This document shows, piece after piece, positions 7,851 through 33,940 of a DNA stretch of 34,186 bases. Position numbers and translations under genes: made by a program. The first letter of the stretch is position 1. The number at the start of each line of letters is the position of its first letter. This DNA comes from Octopus bimaculoides (taxonomy: Eukaryota). The notes under the pieces were generated by a model, which was not told the origin of the DNA, ran no database searches, and saw only the letters and a list, made by a program, of their open reading frames with translations. Location of the stretch: contig NC_068985.1 in NCBI RefSeq assembly GCF_001194135.2, positions 34,509,006-34,543,191 of the forward strand, written 5' to 3'.

Positions 7851-7892
7851 AGAAAGAAAATGCTTATGCTACTATTTCACTTGCATCTGATA
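7851..7892 (+). CDS. 42-nt phase 1-1 micro-exon, (x)KENAYATISLASD
   Basis: Acceptor ttctagtttcatAG, donor GTAAGT. Stop-free in phase 1 with an acidic YATI motif. Confidence 0.8.
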
Positions 7893-8315
7893 GTAAGTAT
7901 AATTAATGCCTATTAGTAAATAGCATTATAGTTCATATTACTCTCAAAATTATATTTCACCTCTCATTTGTTTGAGTTACTTCTCTGCATCCATAGTGGG
8001 GTACCAACTTGAAGAGTTTTAGTTGAATAAATTAACCCTTCTGCTTCTGCTTTTCCTATCAATTTCTTTTATTAAACAACTCAGTTACTCAAGGGAGGTA
8101 AACTAATCAGCACTGGTCAAATGTTGGGAAGATAAACACAAAGACAGATTTGCACACACGAAAACACACACACGAAAACACACACGTGCATAACATTATC
8201 ATGAACGTTATTTTTTCTGTTTCCCAAGTTGGCATAAGTAGGATTGTTCAACAGGATTCAGTAGATTAGAGGACCAGATCTTATTTCAATGTCTCAATGC
8301 TAAGGAGAATGCATT

Positions 8316-8706
8316 AGGTGTGGCTGTGTGGTAAATAGCATGCTTACGAACCACATGGTTCCAGGTTCAGTCTCACTGTGTGGCACCTTGGGCAAGTGTC
8401 TTCTACTATAGCCTCGGGCCGACCAAAGCCTTGTGAGTGGATTTGGTAGATGGAAACTGAAAGAAGCCCATTGTATATATGTATGTATATATATGCATGT
8501 GTGTGTATATGTTTGTGTGTCCGTGTTTGTCCCCCCACAACATCGTTTGACAACCGATGCTGGTGTGTTTATGTCCCCGTAACTTAGCGGTTCGGCAAAA
8601 GAGACAGTAGGATAAGTACTAGGCTTAGAAAGAATAAGTCCTGGGGTCGATTTACTTGATTAAAGGCGGTGCTCCAGCATGGCCACAGTCAAACGACTGA
8701 AACAAG
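8316..8706 (+). mobile_element. tRNA-derived SINE, family B, full length
   Basis: gtggctgtgtggtaa...ggttcagtc head, internal (TA/TG) microsatellite, cagtcaaacgactgaaacaag tail. Absent at the paralogous A2/A3 junction (~11520-11550). Confidence 0.92.
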
Positions 8707-8794
8707 ACAACAACAACAGGACTGATCATCTAGCCATATATTGAATATAAAAAGTCAAAGAGAAAGTGATCTTTTTCTTGATTTATCACACTTA

Positions 8795-9423
8795 TGTAGT
8801 GGTTAAATGAGTATCATGGTGAACAGATGCAAAAGGAATGTGTATGCCTTTGAAGTAAACAAAAGAGTGAATCGATTCATAGTAGAAAATAATTTATTCA
8901 CTGGATTTGCTGTTGGTACACATAATTCTTCATTACATGCAAAATGTTGACAACTGCTACGAGTTGCTAGAAATAGAAACTGGGTACATCTGTGGAAATG
9001 ATATGTCAGAAATGAATATTTATGTGTGTATACATAGTTCATCTGAGACAGTAGTCTACTGTAAAACTTTGAACATTGCTCTGGGTTTCTGCGAAAAGCT
9101 GTCATGTTGTAGACCTTTCTCGTCTGCCTGCTAAGCCTTTCTCCTTCACGTATGTCTGTTGACCACTGTATTTATAATAATTGTGGCAGCTAGAAGGACA
9201 GACATACTGCAGCAGAGGCTGCACCTAAATAGGTCAGCTCCTGTCCATTTGAACTTCGCCTGACATGGCTAAGGTCGTAGGTCAAAGAGAGATGATCAAT
9301 CACTTTTTGACAGGACAAAGAAAACCTGTTTTCACGCCTGTTGATCGTGGTGGTTTGGACGACTGAGAATTCTTAGATTCAGTTTCGAATCTAGGCTTGG
9401 AGAAGGAAGTGTTAATTTTTACA
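8795..9423 (-). mobile_element. Solo LTR (629 bp), TG...CA ends, 4-bp TSD CTTA
   Basis: ctta|TGTAGTGG...TTTTTACA|ctta. The empty site acacttatattggtaa is present in paralogous unit A3 (~11635). TATAAATA (~9172) and AATAAA (~8895) on the minus strand give the orientation. Confidence 0.8.
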
Positions 9424-9635
9424 CTTACATTGGTAATTAAATTTTGTGTTTCTTTATATGTTATTTTGTTTTTGTTTTGTTTTATTTCAGTATACTTTAC
9501 TATATCCTGATATTATATTATAATGCTATAAACGTTCTTTAATACATCTGATCCTAGAAACAGTTCATTTCAGATGTTATGTACCACACATATATAAACA
9601 ATAAACATATTTACTTTACATTTTTATTTTCATAG

Positions 9636-9677
9636 ATGAGGAAAATGCTTATGCTACTATTTCACTTGCATCTGATA
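9636..9677 (+). CDS. 42-nt phase 1-1 micro-exon, (N/D)EENAYATISLASD
   Basis: Acceptor tttttatttttcatAG, donor GTAAGT, stop-free. Confidence 0.82.
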
Positions 9678-9903
9678 GTAAGTATAATTAATGCCTATTA
9701 GTAAATAGAATTGTAGTTCATATCACTCTCATAATTATATTTTGCCTTTCACCTTTAACTTGTTTGAGTCACTTCTCTGCATCCATCTTGAAGAGTTTTA
9801 ATTGAATAAATTAACCTTCCTGCTACTTTTCCAATCAATTTTATTTACTAAACAACTCAGTTACTCAACCAGCACTGGTTGTCAAATGTTGGGAAGATAA
9901 ACA

Positions 9904-9907
<4 letters not shown>

Positions 9908-9949
<42 letters not shown>

Positions 9950-10105
9950 NNNNNNNNNNNNNNNNNNNNNNNNNNNNNNNNNNNNNNNNNNNNNNNNNNN
10001 NNNNNNNNNNNNNNNNNNNNNNNNNNNNNNNNNNNNNNNNNNNNNNNNNNNNNNNNNNNNNNNNNNNNNNNNNNNNNNNNNNNNNNNNNNNNNNNNNNNN
10101 NNNNN
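9908..10105. repeat. (GA)n microsatellite followed by a 156-N assembly gap
   Basis: Directly visible. Confidence 0.97.
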
Positions 10106-11361
10106 TTCCATAAATAATGTTATTTTTTATATACTTCTATTATTTTTCAAAATCAAGAGAAACAAAGTTCTTTTTTCATCTAAAATATACTCTCCATTAT
10201 TTTCTACAATGCTCTTCCATCTATCTGGTAGACTTGCAAGGCCCCTCTTCCAAAATTCACTTGTCTGTGACAAAAAAATAATCCTCTGGTACTGCTCTGA
10301 CCTCATCTACAGAATTTATATTTTTCCCATCCAAATGACTTTGAAAACTACTGAATAAATGATAATCAGATGGTGCAATGCCCAGCAAATATGATGTGGT
10401 GTGTGTGTGTGTGTGGGTGGGTGGGGGGTGTTTCCCATTCAAACTGCCCCAGTCTTTGGAATCTCATCCTTGCTGTATGTGGCCAAGCATTATCCTGATG
10501 GAAGAACACCTTTTGCCTTGAAACCAAAGATGGTCGTTTTTTTCTACAATCAAGCTGCAGTAGATCTTTGTTATCGTTTGCTTTGGGTTTAAAAGTTCAA
10601 AGTGGACTAAACCTTTCATATCCCTCTAAACAGATAACAACACCTTACGTGGGTGAAGACCTTTAAGTCTGGGGTGTTTCTTATTTCCCTACTAACTGTC
10701 CTTGGTGCTTGACATTTTTATAGAGAATCCATTTCTCGTCACCAGTCACAAGTTGGTCCAAAAAGGTTCATCTGTGAGACGTGACAGCAAAGAAGATCAC
10801 ACATTCACTCTTTGCATGCAATTAGACTTGAAAAGTTTGTGAGAAACCCATTAACTGTTCTCTTTTCCAATGGCACACAGGTGTCAATGAATAGTTGAAT
10901 AACCAAATTCAAGTATCTCTGCTAGTTTCTCAAATGTTACGATGGAATTTGGCTCCACCAGGTTTTTCGGAACATCCTTGTTGGGCTTTACAGATCTTTC
11001 AGGACAAGGCTCACCTGCAAAAGTGTAGTTTCCAGCTCAGAATTTCTGAAACTACCAGTTGACACTGGCTTATGCTTATTGTCTGATCCCCATATACTGC
11101 ATTAATATTCCTTGCACTTTCTGCTGTGTTTTTGCCTTTATTGAACTCATAAGGCAAAATATGCCAAATATGTTCCATTGTCACTTTGAAAAAATAGCTG
11201 TTAGAATTGAACTGCACTCTTCAAAACTTGCACTAAGAGTAAGGACAAGGTAAAATTACTACCTGCTTTTATACCAAGTTGATGCAGGTAGCTTATCCCA
11301 TCCCGCACTGAGATTTAGTCCATGCAATTGAAAAAATTGCCTTATTTATAGGATGACCCAA
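10106..11361 (-). mobile_element. Mariner DNA transposon, degenerate; left end lies in the gap
   Basis: Fragments MEHIWHILPYEFNKGKNTAESARNINAVYG and IAPSDYHLF...HLDGK. The right TIR ...ggatgacccaa is followed by TA. Colinear with 29589-30818. Confidence 0.88.
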
Positions 11362-11850
11362 TAAAATATGTATTTTATACACATACACACACACACATAA
11401 CATCATTATGATCGTTATTTTTTCTGTTTTCTAAGCTGGCATGTGTAAGGTGGTTCAACAGGATTCAATGAATTGGAGGACCCGATCTTATTTCAATGTC
11501 TCAATACTAAGGAGAAAATGCATTTGATCATGTCTGACTTGGAAGTAAACAACAACAACAGGACTGATCATCTAGCCATAATTAATATTGAGTATAAAAA
11601 ATCAAAGAGAAAGTGATCTTTATCTTGATTTATCACACTTATATTGGTAACTGAATTTTTAAAGTGTTTTTTATGTTATTTTGTTTTTGTTTTGTTTTAT
11701 TTCAGTATACTTTACTATATCCTGATATTATATTATAATGCTATAAACGTTCTTTAATACATCTGATCCTAGAAACAGTTCATTTCAGATGTCATGTACC
11801 ACACATATATAGACAATAAACATATTTATTTTACATTTTTATTTTCATAG

Positions 11851-11892
11851 ATGAGGAAAATGCTTATGCTACTATTTCATTTGCATCTGATA
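11851..11892 (+). CDS. 42-nt phase 1-1 micro-exon, (N/D)EENAYATISFASD
   Basis: Acceptor tttttattttcatAG, donor GTAAGT, stop-free. Confidence 0.82.
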
Positions 11893-12619
11893 GTAAGTAT
11901 AATTAATGCCTATTAGTAAATAGAATTGTAGTTCATATTACTCTCAAAAATATATTTTGCCTTTCGCCTTTCACTTGTTTGAGTCACTTCTCTGCATCCA
12001 TAGTGGTGTACTATCTTGAAGACTTTTAGTTGAATAAATTAACCCTCCTGCTGCTTTTTCTATCAATTTTTTTTACTAAACAACTCAGTTACTCAAGAGA
12101 GGTAAACTAATCATCACTGGTTGTCAAGTGCTGAGAGTATAATCACAAAGACAGGCATGCATAAATACACACACACAAACACATGTGCGTGCATTCACAG
12201 ACACACACACACACACACACACACGCGCGCGCACGCACAGAAATATATGACAGGCTTCTTATGTTGTTTACATTTCATGGCAGTAATTGCTTTCACCTCA
12301 ATAGACGTCAGTGATTGGTTGAAATTACCGAAATACGACAATTTTTTTACATGAAATAACTTCGAATACAAAATTTTTTATCTGTTCTATAACACAAAAT
12401 ATACAAGTATACGAAGTTTGAAAGTGTTTCGGTACCAAAATCACTACATAAAACATAAATGAAAAGTGGTACCTGTCAATTCAGAAAGATCCAATATTAA
12501 TTATTGTTTATTCAACTGTTAAGGTTTATTCCCTCTGGCTTCCAACTCACACCATTGATTTTTTAAAAAAATTAGTCACCCAATCAAATTCAATTGCTTA
12601 TTCATTATACTATAACAAC

Positions 12620-14815: not shown

Positions 14816-15330
14816 ATCATCATCATTGTCATCATCGTCGTTTAACGTTCGCTTTCCATGCTAGCATGGGTTGGACGATTTGACTGAGGACTGGTGAAAC
14901 CAGATGGCTACAACAGGCTCCAATCTGATTTGGCAGAGTTTCTACAACTGGATGCCCTTCCTAACTCCAACCACTCCGAGAGTGTAGTAGGTGCTTTTAC
15001 GAAGGCCAGTCAGGCGGTACTGGCAACGGCCATGCTCAAAATGGTGTATTTTACATGCCACCTGCACAGGAGCCAGTTCGGCGGTTCTGGCAACGATCTC
15101 ACTTGAATGTCTTTACACATGCCATCTGCCACAAGTGCCAGGAAGGCGATGCTGAGCACAGGTGCCATTGACGGTTTCGCTTTCACTTGCACCAATAGGT
15201 CTTCGCAAGCCAAGTTTCGTTTCCAATGAAGGAGACGACATTGGCATGGGTGCCAGTCATCGAATTTAATTCGATTTCAGTTTCCCTTGCCTCAACAGGT
15301 CTTCGCAAGCGGAGTTTAGTGTCCAATATA
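14816..15330 (-). mobile_element. RTE-family 3'UTR with (GAT)n tail
   Basis: catcatcat...cgtttaacgttcgctttccatgctagcatggg...ctggatgcccttcctaactccaaccactc is the reverse complement of the RTE tail. Confidence 0.85.
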
Positions 15331-15384
15331 TTCTAAATATTATTTAAAGCCATGTATCATATTCATTACTTCAATTTCTTAAAG

Positions 15385-15426
15385 AAGTGGATAATGCTGG
15401 TGTTAATGTTTTCAAGAAATGTGATA
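15385..15426 (+). pseudogene. Inactivated 42-nt micro-exon paralog, (x)VDNAGVNVFKKCD
   Basis: Acceptor ttcttaaAG intact. The donor reads CTAAGT instead of GTAAGT, and the conserved Tyr codon is GGT. The downstream intron (aataaaattacattcatt) is homologous to that after 16663. Confidence 0.7.
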
Positions 15427-16327
15427 CTAAGTATATAAACAACCCTTTAATAAAATTACATTCATTAAAACACAAGTTCATCCTTTTGTTTTATTTTAAT
15501 TTCAGTCAGAGGTTATGGCCATACTTGGGGACCACCATTAGAGTTAATACTTGTTTGTTTTGGGTTCATTTCCAAGCCCTGTCTCTGGAATCAGTCCAAG
15601 TGAAGTTAGCAAAAAATTATTTCTTTGTGTAAAATATATGGTTTAATAATATGTCTATGGATGTTCTTAAATACAACATAGAAAATCAGTTGTTGTTGAT
15701 AATTAACTGCAATCAGTCCCATTTTTAGATACTTCTCGCCTTAAAATATCTTATTTCTCCAGCCATATTTGTGAATGGCTTTTAATGGTAACATGCTTAA
15801 TTTTAACTGTCAACAAAACTTTTGAATGACAGAAATAGAAGAATTTCATAACAAATTAATTAATTTAGTCTCATAACATTCTGAGTTCAAAATGTGTAGG
15901 AGTAAATTTTATTCTGTGAACCAACCTATAAGTACTAGTTTTATATAATTTCTCTTATAAAATTAGCATTTTGATAATGGAATAAAATTTTGAGTGCCAA
16001 TTCATTGGAGAACTTTCTGTTCAAGCACTAGTTCTGAAATACCATTTAACCAAAATTGCTCTTTGTTTCCTTTTGTTCATACAGAATGGATTTATTATGC
16101 AATTCTTTTCTTTTCTGCAATATACCAATGAGGGATAAAGAACTAATATTGTACACCCAGTTTCATTGGAAGTCAAATATTAATTTGTTTCTAAATACAT
16201 GTGTATATCTATATAAAATATATAATATATTTTATTATTTTTTTAGTTACTTTCTGTGCCACATCAAAATATTTAAAACATCTTCTTGAAACAATAATTA
16301 TGCCTATTTTTAATTAATTTCTTGAAG

Positions 16328-16387
16328 CTATGGAAAAGCAATATGCTAAAACTAGAAGGTCCCATTATTTAGAAATGAAACCACTAG
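16328..16387 (+). CDS. 60-nt phase 1-1 micro-exon, (x)MEKQYAKTRRSHYLEMKPL
   Basis: Acceptor ttaatttcttgaAG, donor AG|GTAAGT, stop-free, YLEM motif. Confidence 0.82.
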
Positions 16388-16621
16388 GTAAGTACAATTA
16401 ATATTCTTAGTGCACAGCATGATCTTAGAAATTATCAGTGAACATCCATGAAATGTAACACTCTCTAACTTTGGTCTATTGATATGTGTGTACATGCATG
16501 TCTGTGTATGTGAGTGTGTTTGGGTATATCTCATTTGTGTTTATAATGCTTGTATCAGCACAATACTAACATAATTTAAATGTTATTTATAACCATGTTT
16601 AAAAAATTCATTTTCTTAAAG

Positions 16622-16663
16622 ACCTGGAAGGTGTTTATGTCAACATTTTACAGAAACCTGGTG
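16622..16663 (+). CDS. 42-nt phase 1-1 micro-exon, DLEGVYVNILQKPG
   Basis: Acceptor ttttcttaaAG, donor G|GTAAGT, stop-free, YVNI motif. Confidence 0.82.
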
Positions 16664-16862
16664 GTAAGTATATAAGTAATCCATTAATAAAATTACATTC
16701 ATTAGAGCAAGAGTTAGCAAAATCTTAGTTCACTCTTTCTTTGAGTAGAATATACAGCTTAATATACGACTTTTATCTTTTAGTTCTTTCAATCACTGAA
16801 CTGTAGCTTTGCTAAGGCACCACCTTGAAGGGTTTAGTCCAACAAACCCACCCAAGGACTTA

Positions 16863-19800
16863 TTACAGTTGTTTATAATTATGTGATTCATTTAGAAATT
16901 AAGAACAATTATTATACAATAAGAATACAACGAAGCTGATGACACTGCAGTGCAATGAAAAAAGGGAGAAGAGATATGAATAACACTCTACTGTTTTTCT
17001 ACCTGCAACATCTGACAGGTTTACATCAGTGTCAGTGAAAAAGGAATATATTTTACAAAAGAAAGACAAAATAACTTCAAAAAATGGAGAAAGAAAACCA
17101 CAGCATCACAGCACCAAGTGCTTCAATTGGTCGCATACTCCAAGGTTCAACAGAACTTACTGAAGCAAATCAACACATGTGCAACATCACCATGGGTGAT
17201 GACAAGGCTAAGGCATTGGAAAAGCCAAGCACCCTTAAGGGAATCATCTGACACCTCGGTAAGGCAAACTGCCAACAGTGTCAGGTTTAGCTGGAATTAG
17301 TCCTGCTCATCCCTTTATTTACCTTACAACTCCTGTAGCAGCCAGCTTCCAGCCATTGCCTCCTGCACCATCCCCCACTGAACCCCACCACCAATGCTAA
17401 TGCTCTTCATCCAACTCCTCCCTCTACTTTCATTTCTAACTTTCCTCCATTTCCCCTTATTCACCTCACCACTCCTGTAACAACTAGCGTACCTCCATCG
17501 CCTCCTGCACCCCCCAAGCCCCCCACCAGAGTTAATGTTGTTCACCCAGCTACTCCCTCTACCTCCAACACTTACTAAGGTTCAAAGCAAACATTTTTCA
17601 AACTGGACATACAACTAATGTCACTTCAGCTCCAACATACTTTGGAGAACAAAACTTTGCTCTGAAGTCCAGATCCCTGTTGAGGATTTTGCTGTCGTGC
17701 TCCAGGGATTGCCCAAGTTGAAGTTCATCAACTGAATTCCTAAGGGAGCTTGGACTTGTTTCACCCATGTTGTCCCAAAGCTGTTGAAGAATGTCTGCTT
17801 ATCCTTCAACACTATGGATTGGCAGAGATTATTCCTTTTCCCTCTGGTCTCTCTCCATATGAGGAACGTGAGTACTGGAACCCTCATATCTTCCCTTAAA
17901 TGGCAGTTTGAGCTGTTCAAATCCACCCCAACCACTGTTCGTTGCAGATCAGTGATCAGCACAGCCCCAAACAATGGTCAATCACCAAACTTAAGGAAGG
18001 CCAGTAATGCCATATTCAGCAAATATGACATTAAAGGTGCTGTTCACCTCCTCCCCTCTTTGTTGTCCCTCACCCAGTGTACCACAGATTCCCTCAGTGA
18101 ATTAGGAGAAACATTCTCCGACCCCTCTGGATGAGTACCTACACTGGCCCAACCCACCAGGTGTTTTACAACCTGTTTTTACCTCCAACGATGTCAAGAA
18201 GGTGATTGCATCCTTTCCTGTGGGTTCTGGTGCTGGGATCAATGGTTTACAACCTCAGCATCTCAAGGATGGTATCTCCCTGTCAGCCAGTGCTGCCAAT
18301 CTTATGCTGTTCATAAACTTATTTTTGTCTGAGAGTGTCTTTTCTTACATTCGTCCACTATTCTTTGAGGTGACTTCCACCCCATAGCAGTTGGTTGCAC
18401 TCTGTGTCTGTGATGACTCACAGCAAAAGTGTGTCTGTCCTCTAACTGCAGGTCTGCCAAATTTTCCCCTATTCAGCTAGGTTGTGAGGCTGCTGCTCAT
18501 GCCTCTAGAGCTTTCACCAACTTGCTCTCTGGGTCCCCAAAGGTCATCCTCAAACTACACCCCAGAAATACCTTCAGTTTCATCAGTCGGGATGTCATCC
18601 TCTGTGCAGTAAAGGAGAATGCCCTACAGCACTATCACATTGCTTGGAAAGCTTATCAGAAGGCCTCCTACCTCTCCTATGGTGACCATCTTATCCTATC
18701 TGCCTCTGGAGTGACCTACTTAGACCTGCTCTATTTGCACTACATATTGATGATGTTACCAAGATGGGAGCTGACCTGGATTTGACTGTCTGATATTTTG
18801 ATGATGCTTATTTGGAGGGGCCCTCCTGATAAGGTCCTTTCAGCTGTGAGGATGATGATTGAGGAACTTGGTTGTAGGGGCCTTAGCATTAAAGTTCCAC
18901 TTGTAAATTCTGACTCCACAACCATCCAGCTTCACATTAGCAGACTGTAAACCTGTTTACAAACCCCTTTCCCTCTATCACACTTCCTCCTTCATCAGTG
19001 TGGGGATCTCTTGGAGCCCTAATTACTGATCAAGCTTTTGAGTATCATTCTTTCGATCCAAGATGGCTAACACAAAATTCTTGAGGTACCTGAGCCCCAT
19101 CAAGGTTTTTTTTATACTTAGGAATTACTTGTCAATTCTTAAGTTATTGTATTTTCTCAGAGTTAGTCCTTCTTATAGATTCTCGGCATCTCTACAATGC
19201 TTTGATGACCTTATCTTCAGAAAGCTCAAATGCTTAATGTCAAACTCATTCCAGAGTCTCATGACCTGGCTGCTTTACCCAAATGGTTTGGGGGTCTAGG
19301 TTTGTGCAAGTACTCATTGCCATCTCTTCCCTATTTTCTTTCTTCCATCCATGCTTGCTCTCCTTTAGTAGACAACATTCTCTCTTCAACATGGACTAGT
19401 TCCAACAGGGAGGTGGATGAAACTCTGCTACAGTGGAGAGACCTGGGTTCATCAGTTTCTGTTACAGTTGAGGATACACAAAAGCAGAGTGTATGAGACA
19501 ATCTGCATTCAGGTGTCACTTTCAATTCTCTCTTTGATCAATCTGATCAATTTTCAAGGTGTTGCCTACTTTTTGCTAGTGCAAGATTCTCGGTGGACTG
19601 GATTGATGCCCTGCCTGCAGCCAACATTGGAAGTCTTCTCAATCTAGATGAGCTCTGCATCTCCATTGAACTCAGAGTGGGAGCTGACGTTTGTAGAAGA
19701 CTGAAATGATGCTGTGATAGGCCCCTTCACTCTACAGGTCTTCACAGTCTGTCTTGCCAGCTAAATGCTGGTCGTTTTGTTTGTCACACTGAGCTAAACT

Positions 19801-23740: not shown

Positions 23741-23874
23741 TATATATATAATCAAATAAGTAACAGGATATCAAGTTTTAATGCAATATGACCATTTCAA
23801 GTGGCTCCATAGCTCTTATAAAATATTTGAGAAAAATTATATTAATATATCCTGTCTGTCACATGGTGTCATGA

Positions 23875-24393: not shown

Positions 24394-24554
24394 CCTTCCA
24401 CGACCAGTCACAGCCCATCTTACAATAATAACAATCAACTTCTGTCATTCAAATTCAAAATGGCTGTTGACTAGCTCATCATGCTTGAAACTCCTTAATA
24501 ACAGCATCACACAAACATACAGGAGCCCCCCCCNNNNNNNNNNCACACACATAT

Positions 24555-26200
24555 GATGATATTAACCAGTAGGCCAGAGATATAGCTATTAAAATAGGTA
24601 AAGAAAATAGAATAGAGACTCTAACAAAGAGAGAGACCTTCATAATGATCAAAGATCATAAGCCTAACTTTTTCCTCTAACTCTAACTGCAGGCTGATGA
24701 ACCTGGCAAACTCTGAGATTGGCCAGGTGAGCAAGCAGCTCATCAGGAAGATCTGTAACAGCATCAGAAATGTCTCTGACCTCACCTTACGGTGCAACAC
24801 CAAAGAGGCCATTACTTGATTTAAGGCCAACAGCAGTAGGAGTAGAGGTAGGTTTATCCAATTTGATATAGTGGACTTCTACCCACCTATATCAAGGGAG
24901 CTCCTATCAGGGGCACTTGACTTCAACATAACCTTTACCGAGGTCAACGACAAAGACATACACATTATCATGCATATCAGGAGAACCCTTCTCTTTAGTA
25001 AGGGGTCCACTTGGACCAAATGCACCAACCTCGCTGGTTTATTTATCCTGGACATATTGAAAAAGAAATTCTCTTCTATTATTTTTGGCCTATAAAGGGA
25101 TGACGTGCTGGCAATTTCAAGAGGTGCTAACAACCATATGCTAGATAGGCTCCAAAAGGACCTCATGTCCACCATGAACTCCCTCGGATTGAAGGTCATT
25201 ATAGAGACCAACCTGAAAGCGGATTTCCTTGATGGGACACTGAACCTGGATTCAGGTGCCTATAGGTCCTTTAGAAAACCAAATGAGAAGTTGTCTTATA
25301 TTAACACAGGTTCTTTCCATCCAGCCATAGTGTTCAGGAACCTAGTTAAGGGCATCAGTAGGAGAATCTCCAACTTGTCTTCAATCAAAGAGATCTTCGA
25401 TGCTGCCACCTCATATTACAACTGGGCTCTGGCTGCCAGTGGTTTCAAGGATAGGATTAGTTACATGCCAGACTCTAGCACCACCAATAGAAAACACCAC
25501 TGGAAAGTACTGTGATTCACACAACCTTTCTCTTTAAATGTTAGGACCAGAGTAGATAAGATCTTTCTTAGCTTAATTGACAGACACTTTCCTTTGACCA
25601 ATAGATTCTATAAAATATTTAATAAGCATACTCTGAGATCATCCTTTAGCTGTGCACCTAGTTTAAAAATGATTTTAGTAGGTAGACCCAGACCTGAGAC
25701 TGTGGCAGAATGTTCAAGAAAGGGTAACACAACACTAAATGGGCAATGCAATACAAAAAGGGGCAACAGAAGGCCTCTTCAGAACCTGCTTTAACAGCCA
25801 CAAGTTCATTTTTAACATCCCTGAGAGATGGAATGCCACAACCCTAGTCCAGCACGTCTGGGCTTTAAAAGGAAGCACCACAGAATACAGTATCAAGTAG
25901 AAAATCATAGAAAGATGCAAGCTCTGCTTCAAAAGTAGCAGGAAGTGCAGACTATGCCTGGTCGAGAAGAGGGCAATCTTAAAAGGCACCCAACACCCGG
26001 ATATTTACCTCAGTAGCAAGAGTGAGGCATTTAATCCTTGTCCACATGAAAGAAAATACATTCTGTCATACCTGCATGATTCACCATGACTGTCACCATG
26101 GGTCCCCTGCCTCGTCCTTCTGCAATAGACCTTCCATCAATGCCCTTGAGGCTGGCGTAAAGCGATTGACCAAGACATACACCAAAATACCCATGTGCAC
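24555..26200 (+). mobile_element. Penelope-like retroelement (RT + GIY-YIG-type C-terminus), degenerate and 5'-truncated
   Basis: TFIMIKDHKPNF...CRLMNLANSEIG...FIQFDIVDFYPPIS, GL*RDD (YRDD catalytic motif), DFLDGTLNL, LSYINTGSFHP, *FTQPFSLNVRT. C-terminal ...KCRLCLVEKRAI...SKSEAFNPCPHERKY. The 3' boundary is uncertain. Confidence 0.9.
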
Positions 26201-27781
26201 AAATACACACACACACACACTCACTCATAAGACAGACACCTCACAAATAAACACTCCCACAACCCTCAGCACACACCACCCTCACATAAACAAACCAACT
26301 TGCACACTTACGCACTATACATTACACACAATACACACTACACTTTATGCATCACATTATACATCACACATTACACACCACATGGAAATATATATAAAAA
26401 AAACTACACAACTTTATCCTTTACATGCACCCCACCCCCACCCCACAGAGAAACTACACAATTTTAATACAACCTTTCCCCACTTCACAATTTCCTTTCT
26501 CCAACTCAGCAGCAAACAAGGGACATGACTCATAACTGACTCACTTGGAACTTTTTTTCATTCTACCAACTTTACACAGCAGATGCCAACCGGTTATGCT
26601 CATTTCCACCTTCAACAGTGGAGAGCGGTTGCCATTTCCCATTCCATGCCAGCTATCTCTGACGAGCGTATATCATAGTATATTATAAAGCTGGTTTGTT
26701 GTCTAACACTCCATTATATAATTTCACACAAAACCAATTGGTAAGACCAGCCATAATGAGTAATTAACACTATAAAAGTCAGACAATATGTATACATACA
26801 CACACACACATATATATATATATCATTTCAGTTTCCATCAACCAAATCCATACCCAAGGCATTTGTTAGCCCAGGGCTATGGTGAATTGCACCTGCAAAG
26901 CTCTGATTGTGTTGAAAATTTCATAGCATATACAATATACTTTTGAGAAAAATTCATATTTAATTTTGATATTTCGCCATTTTATTAATCCTTACCTATA
27001 TCAATGCAGTTGATAAGCATATATTTTTAAAGCTTTATTTGTACAAATGAGCCAAATAATTACATGACTAATATTGAATTCAGCAGATATTTGCCTAGAC
27101 ATGAGAACAAAGTATTGAAGAGATTAGCAATGGTGAATATGATCAGCTGTTGTTGTTGAATATGTAAAATCATTACAGCTTATAGTTAACCCTAGCAAGA
27201 AAGTAACCTTAGAAAGAATCTTACTTCTGTAAACATATTTATGAACAGCTTCTCTTTATGGTAAAATTATCACTTTTAAGTACGAATAAAATATTGAAGT
27301 GACAGAAATAGTACACATCTATGCTTAACACTGTCAGAAATACATTTAGTGTGAGTACATTCTGAGATCAAATCCCATTAAAGAAAATTTTGTTCAATCA
27401 GCCTGTCAATAAATATTACTTTTATACAATCATTAGCATTTTGCTTATAGAATAGAATTTTGGTTGCCAAGGAACCTTCTCGTCAAGCACTAATTCTGAA
27501 ATGTCATATTAATCAAAATTACTCTTGTTTCCTCTTGATAGAAAATGAATTTATTAGGCAATTCTTTTCTTTTTTCCCAATACATCATGAGAGGATGAAG
27601 AGCATACACTATTCATGGAATTTGCCTGGATTTAAATATTCTTTGCTTTTAAATACATGTTTACATATAAAATATACAATATATTTTATTATTTTGTTAG
27701 TTACTTTCTGTGCCACATCAAATTATTTGGAACATCCTCTCCAAACAATAAATTTACCCATATTTATTTAATTTCTTGAAG

Positions 27782-27841
27782 CTATGGAAGAGCAATGTGC
27801 TGAAGCTAGTAGGTCCAAGTATGTAAAATTGTTACCACCAG
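27782..27841 (+). CDS. 60-nt phase 1-1 micro-exon, AMEEQCAEASRSKYVKLLPP
   Basis: Acceptor ttaatttcttgaAG, donor CAG|GTAAGT, stop-free, SKYVKL motif. Confidence 0.82.
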
Positions 27842-27965
27842 GTAAGTACACTTAATTTTGTTAGTACACTGCATGATCTTAGAAATTATCTTAAACAAAA
27901 ATGGAAAGCAAACAACCATAAAATGTATCACTCTCTAACTTTGGTCTATTAATATGTGTGTACAA

Positions 27966-28353
27966 GTGGAGGCGCAATGGCCCAGTGGTTAGGGCAGCGG
28001 ACTCGTGGTCATAGGATCATGGTTTCGATTCCCAGACCGGGTGTTGTGAGTGTTTATTGAGCGAAAAAACCTAAAAGCTCCACGAGGCTCCAGAAGGGGA
28101 TGGTGGCAAACCCTGCTGTACACTTTCACCACAACTTTCTCTCACTCTTACTTCCTGTTTCTGTTGTGCCTGTAATTCAAAGGACCAGCCTTGTCACACT
28201 GTGTCACGCTGAATATCCCTGAGAACTATGTTAAGGGTACACGTGTCTGTGGAGTGCTCAGTCACTTGCACATTAATTTCAAGAGCAGGCTGTTCCGTTG
28301 ATCGGATCAACTGGAACCCTCGACGTCGTAAGCGACAGAGTGCCAACAAAAAA
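27966..28353 (+). mobile_element. tRNA-derived SINE, family C, with TSD (~tgtgtaca)
   Basis: Box A TGGCCCAGTGG, box B GGTTTCGATTCC, ~300-bp non-tRNA body, A-rich tail. The empty site is visible in paralogous introns (~21765, ~16490). Confidence 0.9.
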
Positions 28354-28462
28354 TATGTGTACATGAATGTATGTGTGTGCAACAGTGCTTGAGTGTATCT
28401 TATTGGTGTTTATTATGCTAGTATCAGCACAATACTAACACTATCTGAATGTCATTCATAGC

Positions 28463-29163
28463 TAGTGGCGGCTCGTGTATAGGTGCTGTGGAACTTCAGC
28501 ACCCCCTATTTCAACTCACTATTATTGATAACATTCAATATAATGGGTCCTTTTTTTTAAATTCTTTCTTTATACTTTGTACATCATATAATCCTTAAGC
28601 TTAATGTCAGTAGCCATCCCCTAGTTTATGAAACAAATACAGAAGTCCTTGTATAGATCAGTGTGCTTCAGTTCCAGCAATGCAGTGTTTGGCTGTTGTG
28701 TGCATGTTCACATGTCTGAGATAGGAAGCTGCACGCTAGGGAGAGAGAGCACTGTGGTTCAGCTGTGCTGATCCTGGTGTGCTAGTGAAAGATGATTTTT
28801 CTTTTTGACTCTATGTGTGTTATGCTTCAAAACGTGTTTATATTCTTGAATGTGATCAAGTGTAGAATTAGATTATTATCCTGCTTCCAACTACAGTGTT
28901 GCTGCCAGGATTTGAAAAATAGGGCAGATTTCACCCCCTTGTTTTGTGATGTTTGGGGGATTTTTGAAAAACAAGGGGGAATTTGCAGCAGTGTTCAGGG
29001 AACAAATTAAACACACTACCCGTCAGTGGCTAAAACTCGAACCAATCAAGTTTATGTATATATTTTATTTTTATATGTTCGTTTCCTTTTCCCAATATTA
29101 AAACAACGGCTAAAAATTTTCTGAAGCAGCACCTCCACTAATTTTATCTATGAGCCACCACTA
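28463..29163. mobile_element. Non-autonomous hAT-type DNA transposon (701 bp), TIR TAGTGGYGGCTC, 8-bp TSD TTCATAGC
   Basis: ttcatagc|TAGTGGCGGCTC...GAGCCACCACTA|ttcatagc. The empty site tcattcattgccatg is at ~33856. Confidence 0.88.
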
Positions 29164-29205
29164 TTCATAGCCATGTTTTTAATTCTATTTTTTAATTTCT
29201 TAAAA

Positions 29206-29247
29206 ATATGGAAGGTGCTTATATTAATGTTTCCCAGAAACCTGGCA
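29206..29247 (+). CDS. 42-nt micro-exon paralog, DMEGAYINVSQKPG; acceptor reads AA
   Basis: Homologous acceptor position is ttcttaaAA. Donor GTAAGC, length and frame are intact. An in-frame AG lies 9 nt downstream (29213-29214). Confidence 0.6.
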
Positions 29248-29588
29248 GTAAGCAATCCATTAATAAAATCACATTCATCAGAGCAAGAGTTAGCAAATCT
29301 TGGTTCATTCTTTCTTTGAGTAGTATAGGCAGCTTAATGTATGTCTTTTATATTTCACTTGTTTCAGTCATTGGACTGCAGCCATGCAGCACCACCTTGA
29401 TGGGTTTAATCCAACAAATCTGCCCAAGTACTTATTCTCAAGCTTTGTACTCATTCTGCTGTGTCTTTTGCCAAACTGTTTAGTTCTGTAGATGTAAACA
29501 GACCAACATTGACTGTCATGTGGTGGCGGTGGTAGTGGTGGATGAACACAAAGACATGCACACTCTTGTATATGTATACATATATGTA

Positions 29589-30818
29589 TTGGGTCATCTC
29601 ATAAATAGTGCAGTTTTTATACTTCTTTTATTTTTCTAAATTAAGGTAAACAAAGTTCTTTTTTAATCTAAAATATACTCTCCTTCATTTTCTACAATGC
29701 TCTTCCATCTATCTGGTAGACTTGCAAGGTCACTCTTCCAAAATGCACTCGTCTGTGATGAAAAATACCGCTCCACTTCTTTTCTGACCTTGTCTACAGT
29801 ATTCATATTTTTTCTGTCCAAATGATTTTGAAGACTGTGGAATAAATGATAATCAGATGAGGCAATGTCTGACAAATATGATGGGTAGGGCATCATTTAC
29901 CATTCAAACTGTTCTAGCCTTTGGAATGTCATCCTTGCTGTATGTTGCTGAGCATTAATCCTGATGGAAGAACACCTTTCATCTTGAAATCAAAGAAGGT
30001 CGTTTTCCTTCTTGTACTGACTTAAATCACTCAAGTAGATCTCCTTTGTTTTCATTTGGTTTGAGTTTAAGAAGTTCGAAGTGGATTAAACCTTTCATAT
30101 CCCACCAAACAGATAACGACACCATATGTGGGTGAACACTTTCTTTAGCCTGGAGTGCTGGTGCTTCTCCTTCCCCTACCCACTGTCTTCAGCACTTGAC
30201 ATTTTTACAGAGAACCCATTTCTCATCACCAGTCACTGTTCAGTCAAAAAAAAGGTTCATTCATGAGATGTGACAGAAAAGAAGAGTGCACATTCACTCT
30301 CTGTACGCGATTAGACTCTGAAAGTTTGTGAGGAACCCATTGACCTAATTTGCTGACTTTCCTGATGGCACACAGGTGTTGATGAATGGTTGAATGACCA
30401 AATCCAAGCTCTGCTGGTTTCCCAAAAGTTATTATGGGATTTTGTTCCACCAGGGTTTGCAGGATGAGGCTCATCTTCTAGGCTGTAGTTTCTGGAACCA
30501 CTGTTGACACTGGCTTATGCTTATTGTCCAATCTCCACATACTGCATTAATATTCCTCACATTTTCCATTGCATTGTAGCCTTTATTGGACTCGTATAGC
30601 AAAATATGCCGAATATGTTCCTTTGTTACTTCCATTATAGCTTTGAAAAAATAACTGTCGAAATCGAACTGCACTCTTCAAAATTTGCACTAAGAATAAA
30701 TACAAAGTAAATTTACTATCTGCTTTTATAGCAAGTTGATACTGGTAGTTCATCCTGTCCCCTTCCAACTTTTAGTTCATGCAATTGAAAAAACTGCATT
30801 ATTTATTGGATGACCCAA
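29589..30818 (-). mobile_element. Near full-length mariner transposon (1230 bp), TA TSD, degenerate transposase
   Basis: TA|TTGGGTCATC...GATGACCCAA|TA. Peptides MEVTKEHIRHILLYE, LGQWVPHKLSE (WVPHEL motif), SDIASSDYHLF (YSPDLAPSDYHLF motif) and LPDRWKSIVENEGEYILD*. Confidence 0.93.
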
Positions 30819-32321
30819 TATATATATTGTAAGTGCTTATTCTGAAATGCCATATTAACTAAAATTACTTTTTGCTTCCTTTTATTAGAAAATGAATTTA
30901 TTAGGTAATACTTTTCTTTTTCACAATACATCTGAGAGGACAGGGAACATATACTGTATATGAACTTTGGCTGGATTTAAATATTCTTTGTTTCTTTTGT
31001 GTTTCACTCTTATAGAAAATGTGTTGAATGTTCATAACTGTACAGTTCCTAGCATCCCCCGGTGCATAGCAGTATTGCACCTTTTATGGCTGCCAGCTCA
31101 TTCATCTCTCATCTCATGATTTCCATGTGGTTGCACAAGGCTTCCTTCGAGAGCTATATATATCAGGATACCAATATCAGAAACACAATGCAACTATCAC
31201 ATTATTTCTCCTTGAAACGTTTTGACCTTCCACATCATGCTGCAATTATTGCATTTCGCCTCAGTTGAGGACTTGATGAAATTTTCATGTTCAATCTTTG
31301 ACAGCTAGCATTGTCAATAATAGGCTGCTCCACTTCTTTTATTACTCTAGGCTGCTTGGCTTCTATAACTCCAGTTAGTGTCACACCTAGCCTGGGGATT
31401 TGATATAGTCACACTGTCACTGTTAGGCATACTTGTACACTCAACATGAACCATTGTTCCAGGTGTTGTGTGCAATTCTGGTTCTGGTTCCTGTGTGTTT
31501 AGTGGGGTCAGTTTCTCAACTGCCACTAACTGCAGTAGGTGACACTCCTTCTTAATCCATGCAGTATTCTTTCCAGCATATATCACATATTGTGCCTTGG
31601 ATGTCGCCTTGTTGAACATGGTTTTGTGTATTACATCCTCAACTCTTTTAAAGAATAGGTTTACAGCAACCCTCAATGGTCTATAATTGACTTTTCAGCC
31701 AGTGATAATTTGCAATCACCTGAGGTACTCTGATGATTAAACAGAATTTTGTTCAACTAGTTGCTGAAATTATCTGCCTTCAGATCAAAATGCTTCAGTA
31801 CAGCTTTCACAGTTTGTACAGCTGGACTGTAGGCAGGTGTCTCAATTTTTTGCAACCCATTGAGGACAACATATTCTTTAATGCAACAAATTCAGGTCTG
31901 TTGTCCAATATTAAAGCCGTGGGCACACCAAGATGAATGAAGACCTCAAGCAGCTTGCTTTTCACTACCTCAGTCGAGTGATTAGGACACAAAAATGCCT
32001 AGATCCATGTTGAATAGACATCTACAATTACAAGTATGTTATTGATGCTTGGAATCTATGCCCAATCCATATGTACACATTCCCAGGGCCCAGAAATAGG
32101 CCATGAATAATTTGCCTTTACTAAATTAGGGCTAATTCTCTGGCAACTATCACAAGGTTTGACAAACTTCTCCTTTGAGTAAGCCAACTCAGGCCACCAA
32201 ATACAGAGTCTTGCCTTCTTTATTGTTTGTTGAATACCCATGTGTGTGTCATGTATTTTAGCTAATACTGTGACTCTATAAGGTGCTGGAATAAACAGAT
32301 GATTTTTATGATATATTGAGA

Positions 32322-32412
32322 GTGGAACCTGGTGCAGCATTCTGGCTTACCAGTCCTCAGTTGAACCGTCCAACCCATGCCAGCATGGAAAGTGGACGTT
32401 AAATGATGATGA
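32322..32412 (+). mobile_element. Short RTE 3' tail nested in the Gypsy pol remnant
   Basis: ggaacctggtgcagc...ccatgccagcatggaaagtggacgttaaatgatgatga. Confidence 0.85.
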
Positions 32413-33366
32413 GGATAAGCCGTTTTTGAATGTTAGAAAATCCTCCAGATTAAAAATCGATCTCCAATTTTGCTGTAAAATTCTTTCTTGTATTTTGCTA
32501 TATAATGCATTTGCATCTAGTTGTTTTTAGATATCTTCCATCATTATGGGATCAATGTCCTACCATGCACTGTTGCATTTGCCTAAATGTGAAGCAAAGA
32601 AAATGATATCATCTTCATTAATTTCAGCATATCTCAATTGAGATAGGGCATCGACATGCAGAATACTCTTACCTGGAACATGCTTAACGATCAATTTGTA
32701 CTGATAGAATCAAACTCTACCTGGCTATTTTTTGTGAAGCATGCTGGAATACATCTAAATCCTTAACAAACAGGATTTTTAAAGGCTGGTGATTTGTTTC
32801 TAAATAAAACTGTTTTCCTAGAAGGAAATGCTGCAGTCTATCTACACACCATAACACAGCATAAACCTCGCTCTCTATGTTCAACCAATTTCATTGTGCC
32901 TCACTAAAGATGTAGCTTATGAATGCTACTGTGTTTTCTTCCTGGGATAACACCACAGCTACTGCAAGCAAGGATGCATCTACAGTTAGTGGCAGTTGAG
33001 CAACTGGCCCCACTAACCACACGGAAAACAGAACCAGAATTCAGACTACACTTGGCACAATGGTCCATGCTTAATCTGCAAGGATGTCTAACAATGATGT
33101 GCAACTATATCAAGTCCCCAGGCTAGGCATGACACCAACGCCAGAGTTATAGAAATGGAGCAGCCTATTATTGACAATGCTAATACATTGGGATATCCCC
33201 AGATGAGTTTGTATCTCATTCTCATCCCCATATGTTGTGCTTCACTCTTACAGAAAATGCATTTCACCTCTGAGGCACATGCTGTACAGTTAATAACATA
33301 CGTTGCTGTGTAATGGTATTGTCACTTTTATGGCTACCAGCTCATTGATCACTCATCTCATGATTT

Positions 33367-33368
<2 letters not shown>

Positions 33369-33422
<54 letters not shown>
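33369..33422. repeat. (TA)n microsatellite expanded inside the Gypsy 5' LTR
   Basis: Directly visible. The other LTR has only a short tatatata at the matching region. Confidence 0.95.
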
Positions 33423-33429
<7 letters not shown>

Positions 33430-33591
33430 TGAGGATACTAATGCAACTATCAGAGTTTCTGAACGCATGTTTACATGTAAAATATACAATATATTTTATT
33501 ATTTTGTTAGTTACTTTCTGTGACATATCAAAATAATTGGAACATCTTCTCTGAACAATAAATACACCCATATTTATTTAATTTCTTGAAG

Positions 33592-33651
33592 CTATTGAAG
33601 AGCAATATGCTGAAGCTAGTGGGCCCGAATATTTAGAATTGATACCACCAG
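33592..33651 (+). CDS. 60-nt phase 1-1 micro-exon, (A/T)IEEQYAEASGPEYLELIPP
   Basis: Acceptor ttaatttcttgaAG, donor CAG|GTAAGT, stop-free, two tyrosines. Confidence 0.85.
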
Positions 33652-33898
33652 GTAAGTACACTTAATTTTGTTAGTACACTGCATGATCTTAGAAAAAATC
33701 TTTGTCAAAATAGAAAGCAAACAACCATGAAATGTATCGCTCTTGGTTTAATACTATGTGCGTACATGCATGTATGTGCATGTGAGAATGTTCAAGTGTA
33801 TCGCATTAGTGTTTATTATGCTAGTATCAGCACAATGCTAATACAATTTAAATGTCATTCATTGCCATGTTTTTTTTCTATATTTTAATTTCTTGAAG

Positions 33899-33940
33899 AC
33901 ATGGATGGTACTTATGCCAATATTTCACAAAAACCTGGTG
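33899..33940 (+). CDS. 42-nt phase 1-1 micro-exon, DMDGTYANISQKPG
   Basis: Acceptor ttttaatttcttgaAG, donor G|GTAAAA, stop-free, YANI motif. Confidence 0.78.

What the first reader, a model, noticed from the sequence alone, without database searches (positions are those of the whole stretch)
7851..33940. Hidden array of 12 symmetric tyrosine-motif micro-exons: a modular phosphotyrosine receptor tail
Seen: eight 42-nt and four 60-nt segments sit between polypyrimidine-AG and GTAAG-type sites, all phase 1-1. None has an indel or an in-frame stop, while the homologous flanking introns have many indels and TE insertions. Codon 6 is Tyr in 7 of 8 short and 2 of 4 long exons, and all 4 long exons have a Tyr at codon 14. 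Acidic residues precede the tyrosines. Established: pY-x-N is the Grb2 SH2 consensus, pYxxM the PI3K p85 consensus, and ENPYATI-like motifs occur in MEGF10/PEAR1 tails. Inference: these exons encode the cytoplasmic tail of a receptor (MEGF10/Draper-like scavenger receptor, or the juxtamembrane region of a receptor PTP) that grew by exon duplication. Any subset can be skipped in frame, which allows combinatorial choice of SH2 docking sites. The host gene cannot be identified from this window.
Basis: partly seen in the sequence, partly recalled or inferred. Interest (0 to 1): 0.92.

Follow-up and report, generated by a model that had tools for sequence, protein, structure and literature searches.

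The report
Tandem array of exon-like tyrosine cassettes
Twelve short exon-looking segments with tyrosine motifs do sit in this animal (octopus-like) DNA, but they are copies of one duplicated unit that change as fast as the surrounding non-coding DNA, so nothing here shows that they form a working signalling tail.

Summary
The 12 segments exist at the stated coordinates: eight of 42 nt and four of 60 nt, all on the + strand. Three claims are overstated. Three copies lack an essential splice dinucleotide: 15385-15426 has donor CT, and 21594-21653 and 29206-29247 have acceptor AA. Two more copies have weak donors. All 12 descend from one ancestral unit of about 0.3 kb by local tandem duplication, so they count as one observation multiplied by copying, not twelve.

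Among the four B units the exons diverge more than their flanks (0.21-0.24 against 0.16). pN/pS is about 1, and third codon positions vary least. Splice dinucleotides are lost at the neutral rate (3.2-4.4 expected, 3 seen). Tyr codons are kept no better than drift predicts. The only signals that depart from neutrality are modest: no stops (P about 0.02-0.04, but a control frame is open too), no indels (P about 0.1), and well-kept splice-site blocks.

No transcript, homologue or host gene could be reached with these tools. The protein database appears to lack cephalopods. Both assembly gaps lie in repeats between cassettes. Whether any copy is spliced into mRNA is close to even odds. The MEGF10/Draper or receptor-phosphatase tail reading is unsupported.

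The parts
7851..7892 (+). A-type 42-nt cassette 1. Peptide KENAYATISLASD, acceptor tttcatAG, donor GTAAGTAT.
9636..9677 (+). A-type 42-nt cassette 2. Peptide EENAYATISLASD, intact AG and GTAAGTAT.
11851..11892 (+). A-type 42-nt cassette 3. Peptide EENAYATISFASD, intact AG and GTAAGTAT. 96% identical to cassette 2 over exon +/-60 nt.
15385..15426 (+). Decayed 42-nt copy (X). Peptide VDNAGVNVFKKCD, Tyr replaced by Gly, donor GT changed to CT.
16328..16387 (+). B1 60-nt cassette. Peptide MEKQYAKTRRSHYLEMKPL, intact AAG acceptor and GTAAGTAC donor.
16622..16663 (+). B1 42-nt cassette. Peptide LEGVYVNILQKPG, intact AG and GTAAGTAT.
21594..21653 (+). B2 60-nt copy. Peptide MEEQNAEASEPEYLEMKQP, acceptor AG changed to AA, first Tyr replaced by Asn.
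21913..21954 (+). B2 42-nt cassette. Peptide MGCAYDNVSKKPG, weak donor GTAAAC.
27782..27841 (+). B3 60-nt cassette. Peptide MEEQCAEASRSKYVKLLPP, intact sites, first Tyr replaced by Cys.
29206..29247 (+). B3 42-nt copy. Peptide MEGAYINVSQKPG, acceptor AG changed to AA, donor GTAAGC. About 1.36 kb separates it from its 60-nt partner (donor 27841 to 29206); only parts of that stretch (28350-28462 and from about 29163) match the other B units.
33592..33651 (+). B4 60-nt cassette. Peptide IEEQYAEASGPEYLELIPP, intact sites.
33899..33940 (+). B4 42-nt cassette. Peptide MDGTYANISQKPG, weak donor GTAAAA.
7579..12194 (+). Three A repeat units (7579-8191, 9412-9912, 11565-12194). Between them lie a SINE, an insertion of about 0.6 kb, assembly gap 9950-10105 and a mariner-like element.
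15325..34186 (+). Fragment X plus four B repeat units: 16187-16865, 21452-22272, 27646-27964 with 29163-29566, and 33455 to the window end. Each unit is a dimer of two homologous subunits of about 0.3 kb (60-nt type and 42-nt type). TEs lie between units, as does gap 24534-24543.
16768..16865 (+). Old reversed SINE-tail fragment about 100 nt 3' of the 42-nt cassette. It is present at the same relative place in all A and B units (also at 7952, 9744, 11959, 22051, 29343 and 34038) and marks their common descent.
   Evidence: (family D16)

Best explanation
The region is a local, same-strand tandem array of one ancestral unit of about 0.3 kb that carried a single exon-like cassette: a T-rich tract with AG, a 42-nt open frame, and a GTAAGTAT donor.

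How the array formed:
- Repeated segmental duplication gave the A units (three copies, recent) and the dimeric B units (four copies, each with a 60-nt and a 42-nt derivative).
- One further decayed fragment (X) also survives.
- SINEs, mariner-like elements and other TEs later pushed the copies 1.8-6 kb apart.

How the copies evolve:
- They drift at about the neutral rate.
- There is no detectable constraint on the encoded peptide, on the tyrosines, or on the AG/GT dinucleotides.

Most likely these are unconstrained cassette copies. Either they are pseudo-exons in an intron or intergenic stretch, or they are redundant and freely skippable copies of a proto-exon. They are not a selected 12-module phosphotyrosine docking tail. 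Seven copies (A1-A3, B1 60 and 42, B3 60, B4 60) still have fully canonical splice signals and could be included in an mRNA.

Shown here: the duplication history and the neutral-like divergence. Inferred: the lack of function.
For: - Common origin and same orientation of all copies, which share a SINE-tail fragment at the same relative place.
- In the four-way B alignment, pairwise divergence is 0.206 (60-nt) and 0.242 (42-nt) against 0.159 in the flanks.
- Variable columns number 41 of 102 in exons against 129 of 449 in flanks (Fisher p = 0.03, with exons faster).
- pN/pS is 0.67-2.3.
- Pooled differences by codon position are 21, 16 and 13, with third positions least variable. P = 5e-4 if third positions carried half of the changes.
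- Broken AG/GT: 3 copies observed, 3.2-4.4 expected under drift (and a flank-rate estimate).
- Tyr codons kept: 4 of 4, 4 of 4 and 2 of 4, against about 2.7-2.8 of 4 expected.
- A against B-short is 60% identical over 328 nt. The best-kept block there is the SINE fragment, not the exon.
- Exon-like segments occur by chance about once per 7-8 kb per strand.
- Frame 0 of all eight short copies is open as well.
Against: - No copy has an in-frame stop (simulated P = 0.02-0.04).
- No copy has an indel (P about 0.09-0.14 for B, 0.2 for A against B).
- The 60-nt and 42-nt forms differ by a multiple of 3.
- The best-kept block between the old 60-type and 42-type subunits (58.6% identical overall) spans the acceptor and the exon start. 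The donor GTAAGTA is kept in all three deep lineages.
- Exons are richer in G+C and purines than the upstream flanks.
- The peptides look like real acidic Tyr motifs. Y-x-N-[IV] is kept in 4 of 4 B 42-nt copies while the +1 residue varies.
- These points fit cassettes that are spliced in and constrained only to stay in frame.
Confidence: 0.5

Rival explanations
1. At least the splice-competent copies are genuine cassette exons of an unidentified + strand gene. They encode a disordered, tyrosine-rich segment: Y-A-T-I in A; Y-x-x-[LM] followed by Y-x-N-[IV] in B. This would be a cytoplasmic tail or an adaptor region. The array evolves by birth and death, some copies are dead, and in-frame skipping gives isoforms with different sets of SH2 docking sites.
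For: - Canonical AG/GT in 9 of 12 copies, and donors with full U1 complementarity in 8.
- No stops and no indels.
- The length difference is 18 nt.
- Conservation peaks at the acceptor and donor between old subunits.
- Exon G+C and purine content exceed those of the upstream flank.
- Asn at +2 and Ile/Val at +3 are kept in all four B 42-nt copies.
- Known precedents exist for short Tyr-bearing cytoplasmic exons that are alternatively spliced, such as PECAM-1 exon 14 of 19 aa (PMC2132561).
Against: - No purifying selection on the peptide, the Tyr codons or the splice dinucleotides.
- Three copies are splice-dead and two have weak donors.
- The B acceptors are AAG, which is suboptimal.
- No homologue was found (weak evidence).
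- No transmembrane or ectodomain exon was seen in 34 kb.
- All copies trace to one ancestor, so the independent evidence amounts to about one exon.
Confidence: 0.4
2. The four B units (or the three A units) form a cluster of mutually exclusive exons, chosen by base-pairing between a docking site and conserved intronic selector sequences, as in Dscam-type clusters.
For: Intronic islands just 3' of each B cassette are unusually well kept, at 6-8% divergence against 16% on average.
Against: A duplex-energy scan of the three conserved islands against the whole window found no outstanding complementary site. The best z was about -4 among roughly 3400 windows, which is what extremes give.
Confidence: 0.03
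3. The unit is a dispersed, high-copy transposable element or satellite found genome-wide, and its exon-like signals are incidental.
For: - Each unit contains an old SINE-tail fragment.
- The window is crowded with TEs.
Against: - All 12 copies lie on the same strand in one local array and share flanks, as tandem duplication predicts.
- No terminal repeats, target-site duplications or ORF belong to the unit itself.
- The cassette lies outside the SINE-derived part.
Confidence: 0.04

Closest known systems
Intronic pseudo-exons inside tandem segmental repeats (ordinary non-coding DNA)
   Same: - One exon-like unit multiplied by local duplication.
- Neutral-rate divergence.
- Splice dinucleotides decaying at the expected rate.
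- TE insertions between copies.
   Different: - All 12 copies remain free of stops and indels.
- The splice-site blocks are among the best-kept parts of the unit.
- Both are a little better than drift predicts.
PECAM-1 (CD31) cytoplasmic domain, built from several very short exons that are alternatively spliced (exon 14 is 19 aa and carries a regulatory Tyr; PMC2132561)
   Same: - Short cassettes of 14-20 aa.
- Each carries one or two Tyr motifs.
- Skipping would change the signalling motifs without breaking the frame.
   Different: - PECAM-1 exons are distinct, conserved and proven in cDNA.
- Here the cassettes are recent paralogues with no constraint and no transcript evidence, and no Ig or TM exons are known.
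Draper / CED-1 / MEGF10 engulfment receptor tails (ITAM YxxI/L-x6-12-YxxI/L, NPxY, and about 10 other Tyr; PMC6219719)
   Same: - A Tyr-rich acidic segment.
- One hypothetical junction (33592-33651 + 33899-33940) would give YLEL-x8-YANI, which has ITAM spacing.
   Different: - No NPxY in any cassette.
- The ITAM pattern fits in 1 of 4 units only.
- No EMI, EGF or TM exon was found.
- No sequence homology was detected.
Invertebrate-chordate allorecognition co-receptors with ITIM/hemITAM tails and alternative splicing of the tail (Botryllus FcoR/fester; PMC11507803)
   Same: The idea of switching Tyr motifs in a cytoplasmic tail through isoforms.
   Different: - The motif definitions are not met. 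ITIM needs I/L/V at -2, and here that position is N, G or C. hemITAM needs three acidic residues plus YxxL.
- No homology was found.
Grb2/Drk SH2 docking sites (pY-x-N) in adaptors and receptor tails (own knowledge, not tested)
   Same: All four B 42-nt cassettes read Y-x-N-[IV].
   Different: This is only a four-residue pattern. Phosphorylation, binding and even translation are unknown.

Membership tests
Functional cassette exon | Canonical AG acceptor and GT donor | tested here: inconclusive
   Both are present in 9 of 12 copies. They are lost at 15385-15426 (donor CT), 21594 (acceptor AA) and 29206 (acceptor AA). Donors are weak at 21913 and 33899.
Functional cassette exon | Stronger conservation than flanking intron, with an excess of synonymous or third-position change | tested here: not met
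   Exon divergence is 0.21-0.24 against 0.16 in the flanks. pN/pS is 0.67-2.3. Differences by codon position are 21, 16 and 13.
Functional cassette exon | Open frame and length kept in phase in all copies | tested here: met
   No stops and no indels in any of the 12 copies, and 60-42 = 18 nt. Significance is modest: P is 0.02-0.04 for stops and about 0.1 for indels, and control frame 0 is also open.
Functional cassette exon | Splice junctions seen in RNA | not testable with these tools
   No transcriptome of the source organism can be reached. The protein database seems to lack cephalopods.
Draper/CED-1/MEGF10-like receptor tail | NPxY motif | tested here: not met
   None of the 12 peptides contains N-P-x-Y. 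The Asn sits at -2, not -3, and there is no Pro.
Draper/CED-1/MEGF10-like receptor tail | ITAM YxxI/L-x6-12-YxxI/L (PMC6219719) | tested here: inconclusive
   It forms only if the 60-nt and 42-nt cassettes are spliced together. B4 then fits (YLEL-x8-YANI). B1 and B2 (YLEM) and B3 (second half YINV) do not.
Draper/CED-1/MEGF10-like receptor tail | EMI/EGF ectodomain and transmembrane exons in the same gene | tested here: inconclusive
   Nothing of the kind was recognised among the window's ORFs. Pfam hits were TE domains only. Short exons could be missed, and the gene may extend beyond the window.
Receptor protein tyrosine phosphatase juxtamembrane region | PTP catalytic or FN3/Ig exons nearby | not testable with these tools
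   None was seen in the window, and the scaffold cannot be extended.
ITIM-bearing immunoreceptor tail | (I/V/L/S)-x-Y-x-x-(I/V/L) | tested here: not met
   Only 27782-27841 (SKYVKL) fits the broad pattern. A cassettes have N at -2, and B 42-nt cassettes have G or C at -2.
Grb2-type SH2 docking site | Y-x-N | tested here: met
   YVNI, YDNV, YINV and YANI occur in the four B 42-nt cassettes. This is a pattern match only, and binding was not tested.
Dispersed transposable element family | Copies in both orientations at unrelated sites, with terminal repeats or target-site duplications | tested here: not met
   All copies lie on the + strand in one array and share flanks. Genome-wide copy number cannot be tested here.

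The most novel reading that the evidence does not exclude
The splice-competent copies are real, alternatively included micro-exons of a cephalopod receptor or adaptor. Recent tandem duplication is building a variable set of SH2 docking sites: Y-A-T-I, Y-x-x-[LM] and Grb2-type Y-x-N, plus an ITAM-spaced pair across one junction. Selection acts only on frame and splice competence. This would be a signalling tail caught in the act of growing by exon birth and death.
Probability: 0.3. Interest if true: 0.6.

Novelty: new member of a known kind. Interest (0 to 1): 0.3.

Why it matters
If the cassettes are spliced, this would be a clear invertebrate case of a signalling tail that expands by tandem duplication of symmetric micro-exons. 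Dead and live copies would sit side by side, which is useful for studying how short linear motifs are born. If they are not spliced, the locus is a cautionary case. One chance exon-like unit, once copied 12 times, looks like strong evidence, yet it carries the weight of a single observation. In both cases the kind of object is already known, so the interest is moderate to low until RNA evidence exists.

Tried and rejected
- **Joined-peptide protein search:** the 9-cassette peptide against 5.8 billion proteins gave no hit at E<=10. A control with the window's reverse-transcriptase ORF found only matches of 67% identity or less, on ENA/JGI metagenome host contigs. The negative result is therefore uninformative.
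- **Exact look-ups:** two window ORFs were not on record, so the scaffold could not be extended.
- **Metagenome DNA scan:** an exact scan for the A-cassette core gave 0 matches.
- **Domain and structure searches:** Pfam and PDB sequence searches of the joined peptide found nothing meaningful.
- **RNA genes:** Rfam and tRNA scans of the window found nothing, so no intronic RNA gene reveals a host-gene strand.
- **Docking/selector test:** the test for mutually exclusive splicing found no complementary site.
- **Six-frame Pfam scan:** a whole-window scan was started, but the tool refuses translations with stops. It was not pursued beyond TE ORFs.
- **Literature:** searches for cephalopod Tyr-motif receptors found nothing relevant.
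- **TE-family reading:** rejected on orientation and local structure.

Full report
**What the window is.** The sequence is AT-rich animal DNA (30-46% G+C) full of microsatellites, SINE copies and transposon fragments. Its SINE and repeat content resembles what I recall of octopus genomes. That is my own recollection and no tool tested it. No tRNA gene or Rfam family was found.

**Checking the observation.**
- All 12 segments are present on the + strand.
- The eight 42-nt copies are at 7851, 9636, 11851, 15385, 16622, 21913, 29206 and 33899. The four 60-nt copies are at 16328, 21594, 27782 and 33592.
- In the frame that starts at exon position 3 (phase 1-1) none has a stop, and none has an indel relative to its paralogues.
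- The tyrosine counts are exactly as stated: codon 6 is Tyr in 7 of 8 short and 2 of 4 long copies, and codon 14 is Tyr in 4 of 4 long copies.
- The statement that all copies sit between AG and GTAAG-type sites is not correct. 21594-21653 and 29206-29247 have AA where the acceptor AG should be. 15385-15426 has CT where the donor GT should be. 21913 (GTAAAC) and 33899 (GTAAAA) have weak donors.
- Seven copies have fully canonical signals.

**Assembly gaps.**
- Gap 9950-10105 lies 272 nt downstream of cassette 9636-9677. On its left is an (AG)n run. On its right the sequence starts about 10 nt inside the left inverted repeat of a mariner-like element (10106-11370, minus strand).
- Beyond that element, the flank 11385-11524 matches 8178-8315, which is the flank of the preceding unit. 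Order and orientation across the gap therefore agree with the paralogous unit.
- Gap 24534-24543 lies in unique repeat-like DNA 2.6 kb after 21954 and 3.2 kb before 27782. Nothing in the window spans it, so continuity there is untested.
- Neither gap touches a cassette, and each cassette has its own boundaries, so the frame across the gaps is not an issue. A collapsed extra unit cannot be excluded.

**Anatomy.**
- Self-comparison shows three A units of about 0.6-0.75 kb: 7579-8191, 9412-9912 and 11565-12194.
- It also shows four B units of about 0.7 kb (16187-16865, 21452-22272, 27646-27964 with 29163-29566, and 33455 to the window end) and one fragment X (15325-15478). All are in one orientation.
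- Each B unit is itself a dimer. The subunit with the 60-nt cassette and the subunit with the 42-nt cassette align over about 260 nt at 58.6% identity (score 64, against 31 +/- 5 for shuffles).
- A and B-short units align over 328 nt at 60% identity. They share an old, reversed SINE-tail fragment about 100 nt 3' of the cassette.
- All 12 cassettes therefore descend from one ancestral unit by local tandem duplication. SINEs, two independent mariner-like insertions, an LTR-type integrase fragment and other repeats were inserted later.
It also means the 12 cassettes are one observation copied, not 12 independent ones.

**Is one such unit surprising?** Outside the units, segments with a pyrimidine-rich tract, an AG, 30-120 nt with an open frame and a GTAAG donor occur 3 times on the + strand and at about 4-5 distinct places on the - strand. 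That is roughly one per 7-8 kb per strand. A single ancestral exon-like segment is therefore unremarkable. Any case for function has to rest on how the copies have been kept.

**How the copies evolve.**
- In the four-way alignment of the B units, pairwise divergence is 0.206 in the 60-nt cassettes, 0.242 in the 42-nt cassettes and 0.159 in the aligned flanks.
- Variable columns number 41 of 102 in exons against 129 of 449 in flanks (Fisher p = 0.03, with the exons faster).
- pN/pS between copies is 0.67-2.3.
- Pooling the B-family variable sites with the A against B differences gives 21, 16 and 13 differences at codon positions 1, 2 and 3. Third positions vary least.
- That split is compatible with uniform change (p = 0.38). 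It is very unlikely if third positions carried half of the changes, as in constrained coding sequence (P = 5e-4).
- Tyr codons are kept in 4 of 4, 4 of 4 and 2 of 4 B copies, where drift alone predicts about 2.7-2.8 of 4.
- Simulations that place each copy's observed number of substitutions at random predict 4.4 copies with a broken AG or GT. The flank rate predicts about 3.2. Three are observed.
- Between A and B-short the best-kept block is the SINE fragment, not the cassette.
- The A units are too recent to be informative. The exon region and several hundred flanking bases are equally well kept.
- In short, neither the peptide, nor the tyrosines, nor the essential splice dinucleotides show purifying selection.

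**What does depart from neutrality.**
- The simulated chance that none of the 12 copies acquires an in-frame stop is 0.02-0.04. As a caution, frame 0 of the eight short copies is also open in all 8, an outcome with P about 0.10 under the same model.
- The chance of no indel is about 0.09-0.14 for the B cassettes, 0.5 for A, and 0.2 for A against B.
- The 60-nt and 42-nt forms differ by 18 nt, a multiple of three, though apparently through several smaller indels.
- Between the old 60-type and 42-type subunits the best-kept block is the acceptor region plus the first 10 nt of the exon. The GTAAGTA donor is kept in all three deep lineages.
- The cassettes are richer in G+C (31-42%) and purines than the 100 nt upstream (18-30% G+C).
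- In the four B 42-nt copies the pattern Y-x-N-[IV] is kept while the +1 residue varies (V, D, I, A).
- These points fit cassettes that are spliced in and constrained only to remain in frame.

**External evidence.**
- None could be obtained.
- The joined peptide has no match at E<=10 among 5.8 billion proteins.
- The same database returns only matches of 67% identity or less for a transposon ORF of this window, all from metagenome host contigs. Cephalopod proteomes and transcriptomes are evidently not covered.
- Window ORFs are not on record.
- The exhaustive search refuses spliced peptides.
- A DNA scan of metagenome contigs found nothing.
- Pfam and PDB searches of the peptide were empty.
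- A search for a docking site complementary to the conserved intronic islands, which mutually exclusive splicing would need, was negative.

**Comparison with known systems.**
- The idea itself is not new. PECAM-1 has a cytoplasmic domain in which a 19-aa Tyr-bearing exon is alternatively spliced and changes function (PMC2132561).
- Botryllus FcoR and fester genes vary Tyr motifs in their tails by splicing (PMC11507803).
- Draper has an ITAM, an NPxY motif and about ten further tyrosines (PMC6219719).
- Tested against those definitions, no cassette has NPxY. ITIM and hemITAM patterns are not met, except SKYVKL in 27782-27841. An ITAM would arise only in the hypothetical junction of 33592-33651 with 33899-33940.
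- Only the four-residue Grb2-type Y-x-N pattern is consistently present.
- No EGF, Ig, FN3, transmembrane or phosphatase exon was recognised in the window. That search was not exhaustive.
- The MEGF10/Draper or receptor-phosphatase assignment therefore rests on nothing beyond motif resemblance.

**Verdict.**
- The functional reading as a selected, modular phosphotyrosine tail is not supported by the way the copies evolve.
- Whether some copies are spliced into a coding mRNA cannot be decided here. I put the odds near even.
- I give 0.5 to unconstrained or pseudo-exon copies and about 0.4 to genuine cassette exons that evolve by birth and death. The remainder goes to minor alternatives.
- RNA junction evidence and the orthologous locus in other octopods would settle it.

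Noticed in passing
window 10106-11370 (-) and 29590-30824 (-): Two decayed mariner-like elements about 75% identical to each other. The second has intact inverted repeats (TATTGGGTCATC...). The left repeat of the first is cut by the assembly gap. Pfam HTH_48 (Mos1 transposase) scores 6e-14. They are independent insertions into different repeat units.
   Followed up: yes
window 8315-8706 (+), 22274-22647 (+), 23325-23736 (-), 29358-29589 (-), 13481-13605 (+), 20216-20368 (-): Many copies of one SINE of about 0.4 kb, in both orientations. An older fragment of its tail is built into every A and B unit.
   Followed up: partly
window 4771-5343 (+), 5891-6241 (+): Reverse-transcriptase ORF fragment (RVT_1 relatives, best 67% identical) interrupted by a third assembly gap at 5327-5336, followed by a weak zf-RVT match. 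Probably one non-LTR retroelement.
   Followed up: partly
window 32059-32340 (-); 31348-31535 and 32980-33167: Integrase zinc-binding (H2C2) fragment of an LTR-type element (9e-12). It lies between two 188-nt inverted repeats that are 80% identical.
   Followed up: no
window 426-1131, 3568-4094, 21060-21489, 14829-15109 (-): A repeated element that contains arrays of a 65-66 bp tandem unit (591-971, 3759-4044, 21182-21259). There are four copies in the window, one of them inverted.
   Followed up: no
window 1829-2108 and 4364-4472: Long microsatellites: (ACT) x93 and (TAA) x36.
   Followed up: no
B units, about 25-50 nt 3' of each 60-nt cassette (e.g. 16412-16431, 33676-33695) and 15-80 nt 3' of each 42-nt cassette: Intronic islands that diverge only 6-8% among the four B units, less than the cassettes themselves (21-24%). 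The first island contains GCATG in all four copies (TGCATG in two), which is the core of the Rbfox binding motif. A single 5-mer could easily be chance.
   Followed up: partly
window 33842-34186 (+): The non-coding frame 0 of cassette 33899-33940 is part of a 115-codon stretch without stops that runs off the window end. Frame 0 is open in all eight 42-nt copies. This weakens the open-frame argument.
   Followed up: partly
window 16664-16680 versus 21955-21962, 29248-29255, 33941-33948: An 8-nt indel lies exactly at the donor of the B 42-nt cassettes. B1 and X carry TAAGTATA twice in near-tandem form. B2-B4 carry it once, which recreates a GT donor but leaves it weaker in B2 and B4.
   Followed up: partly
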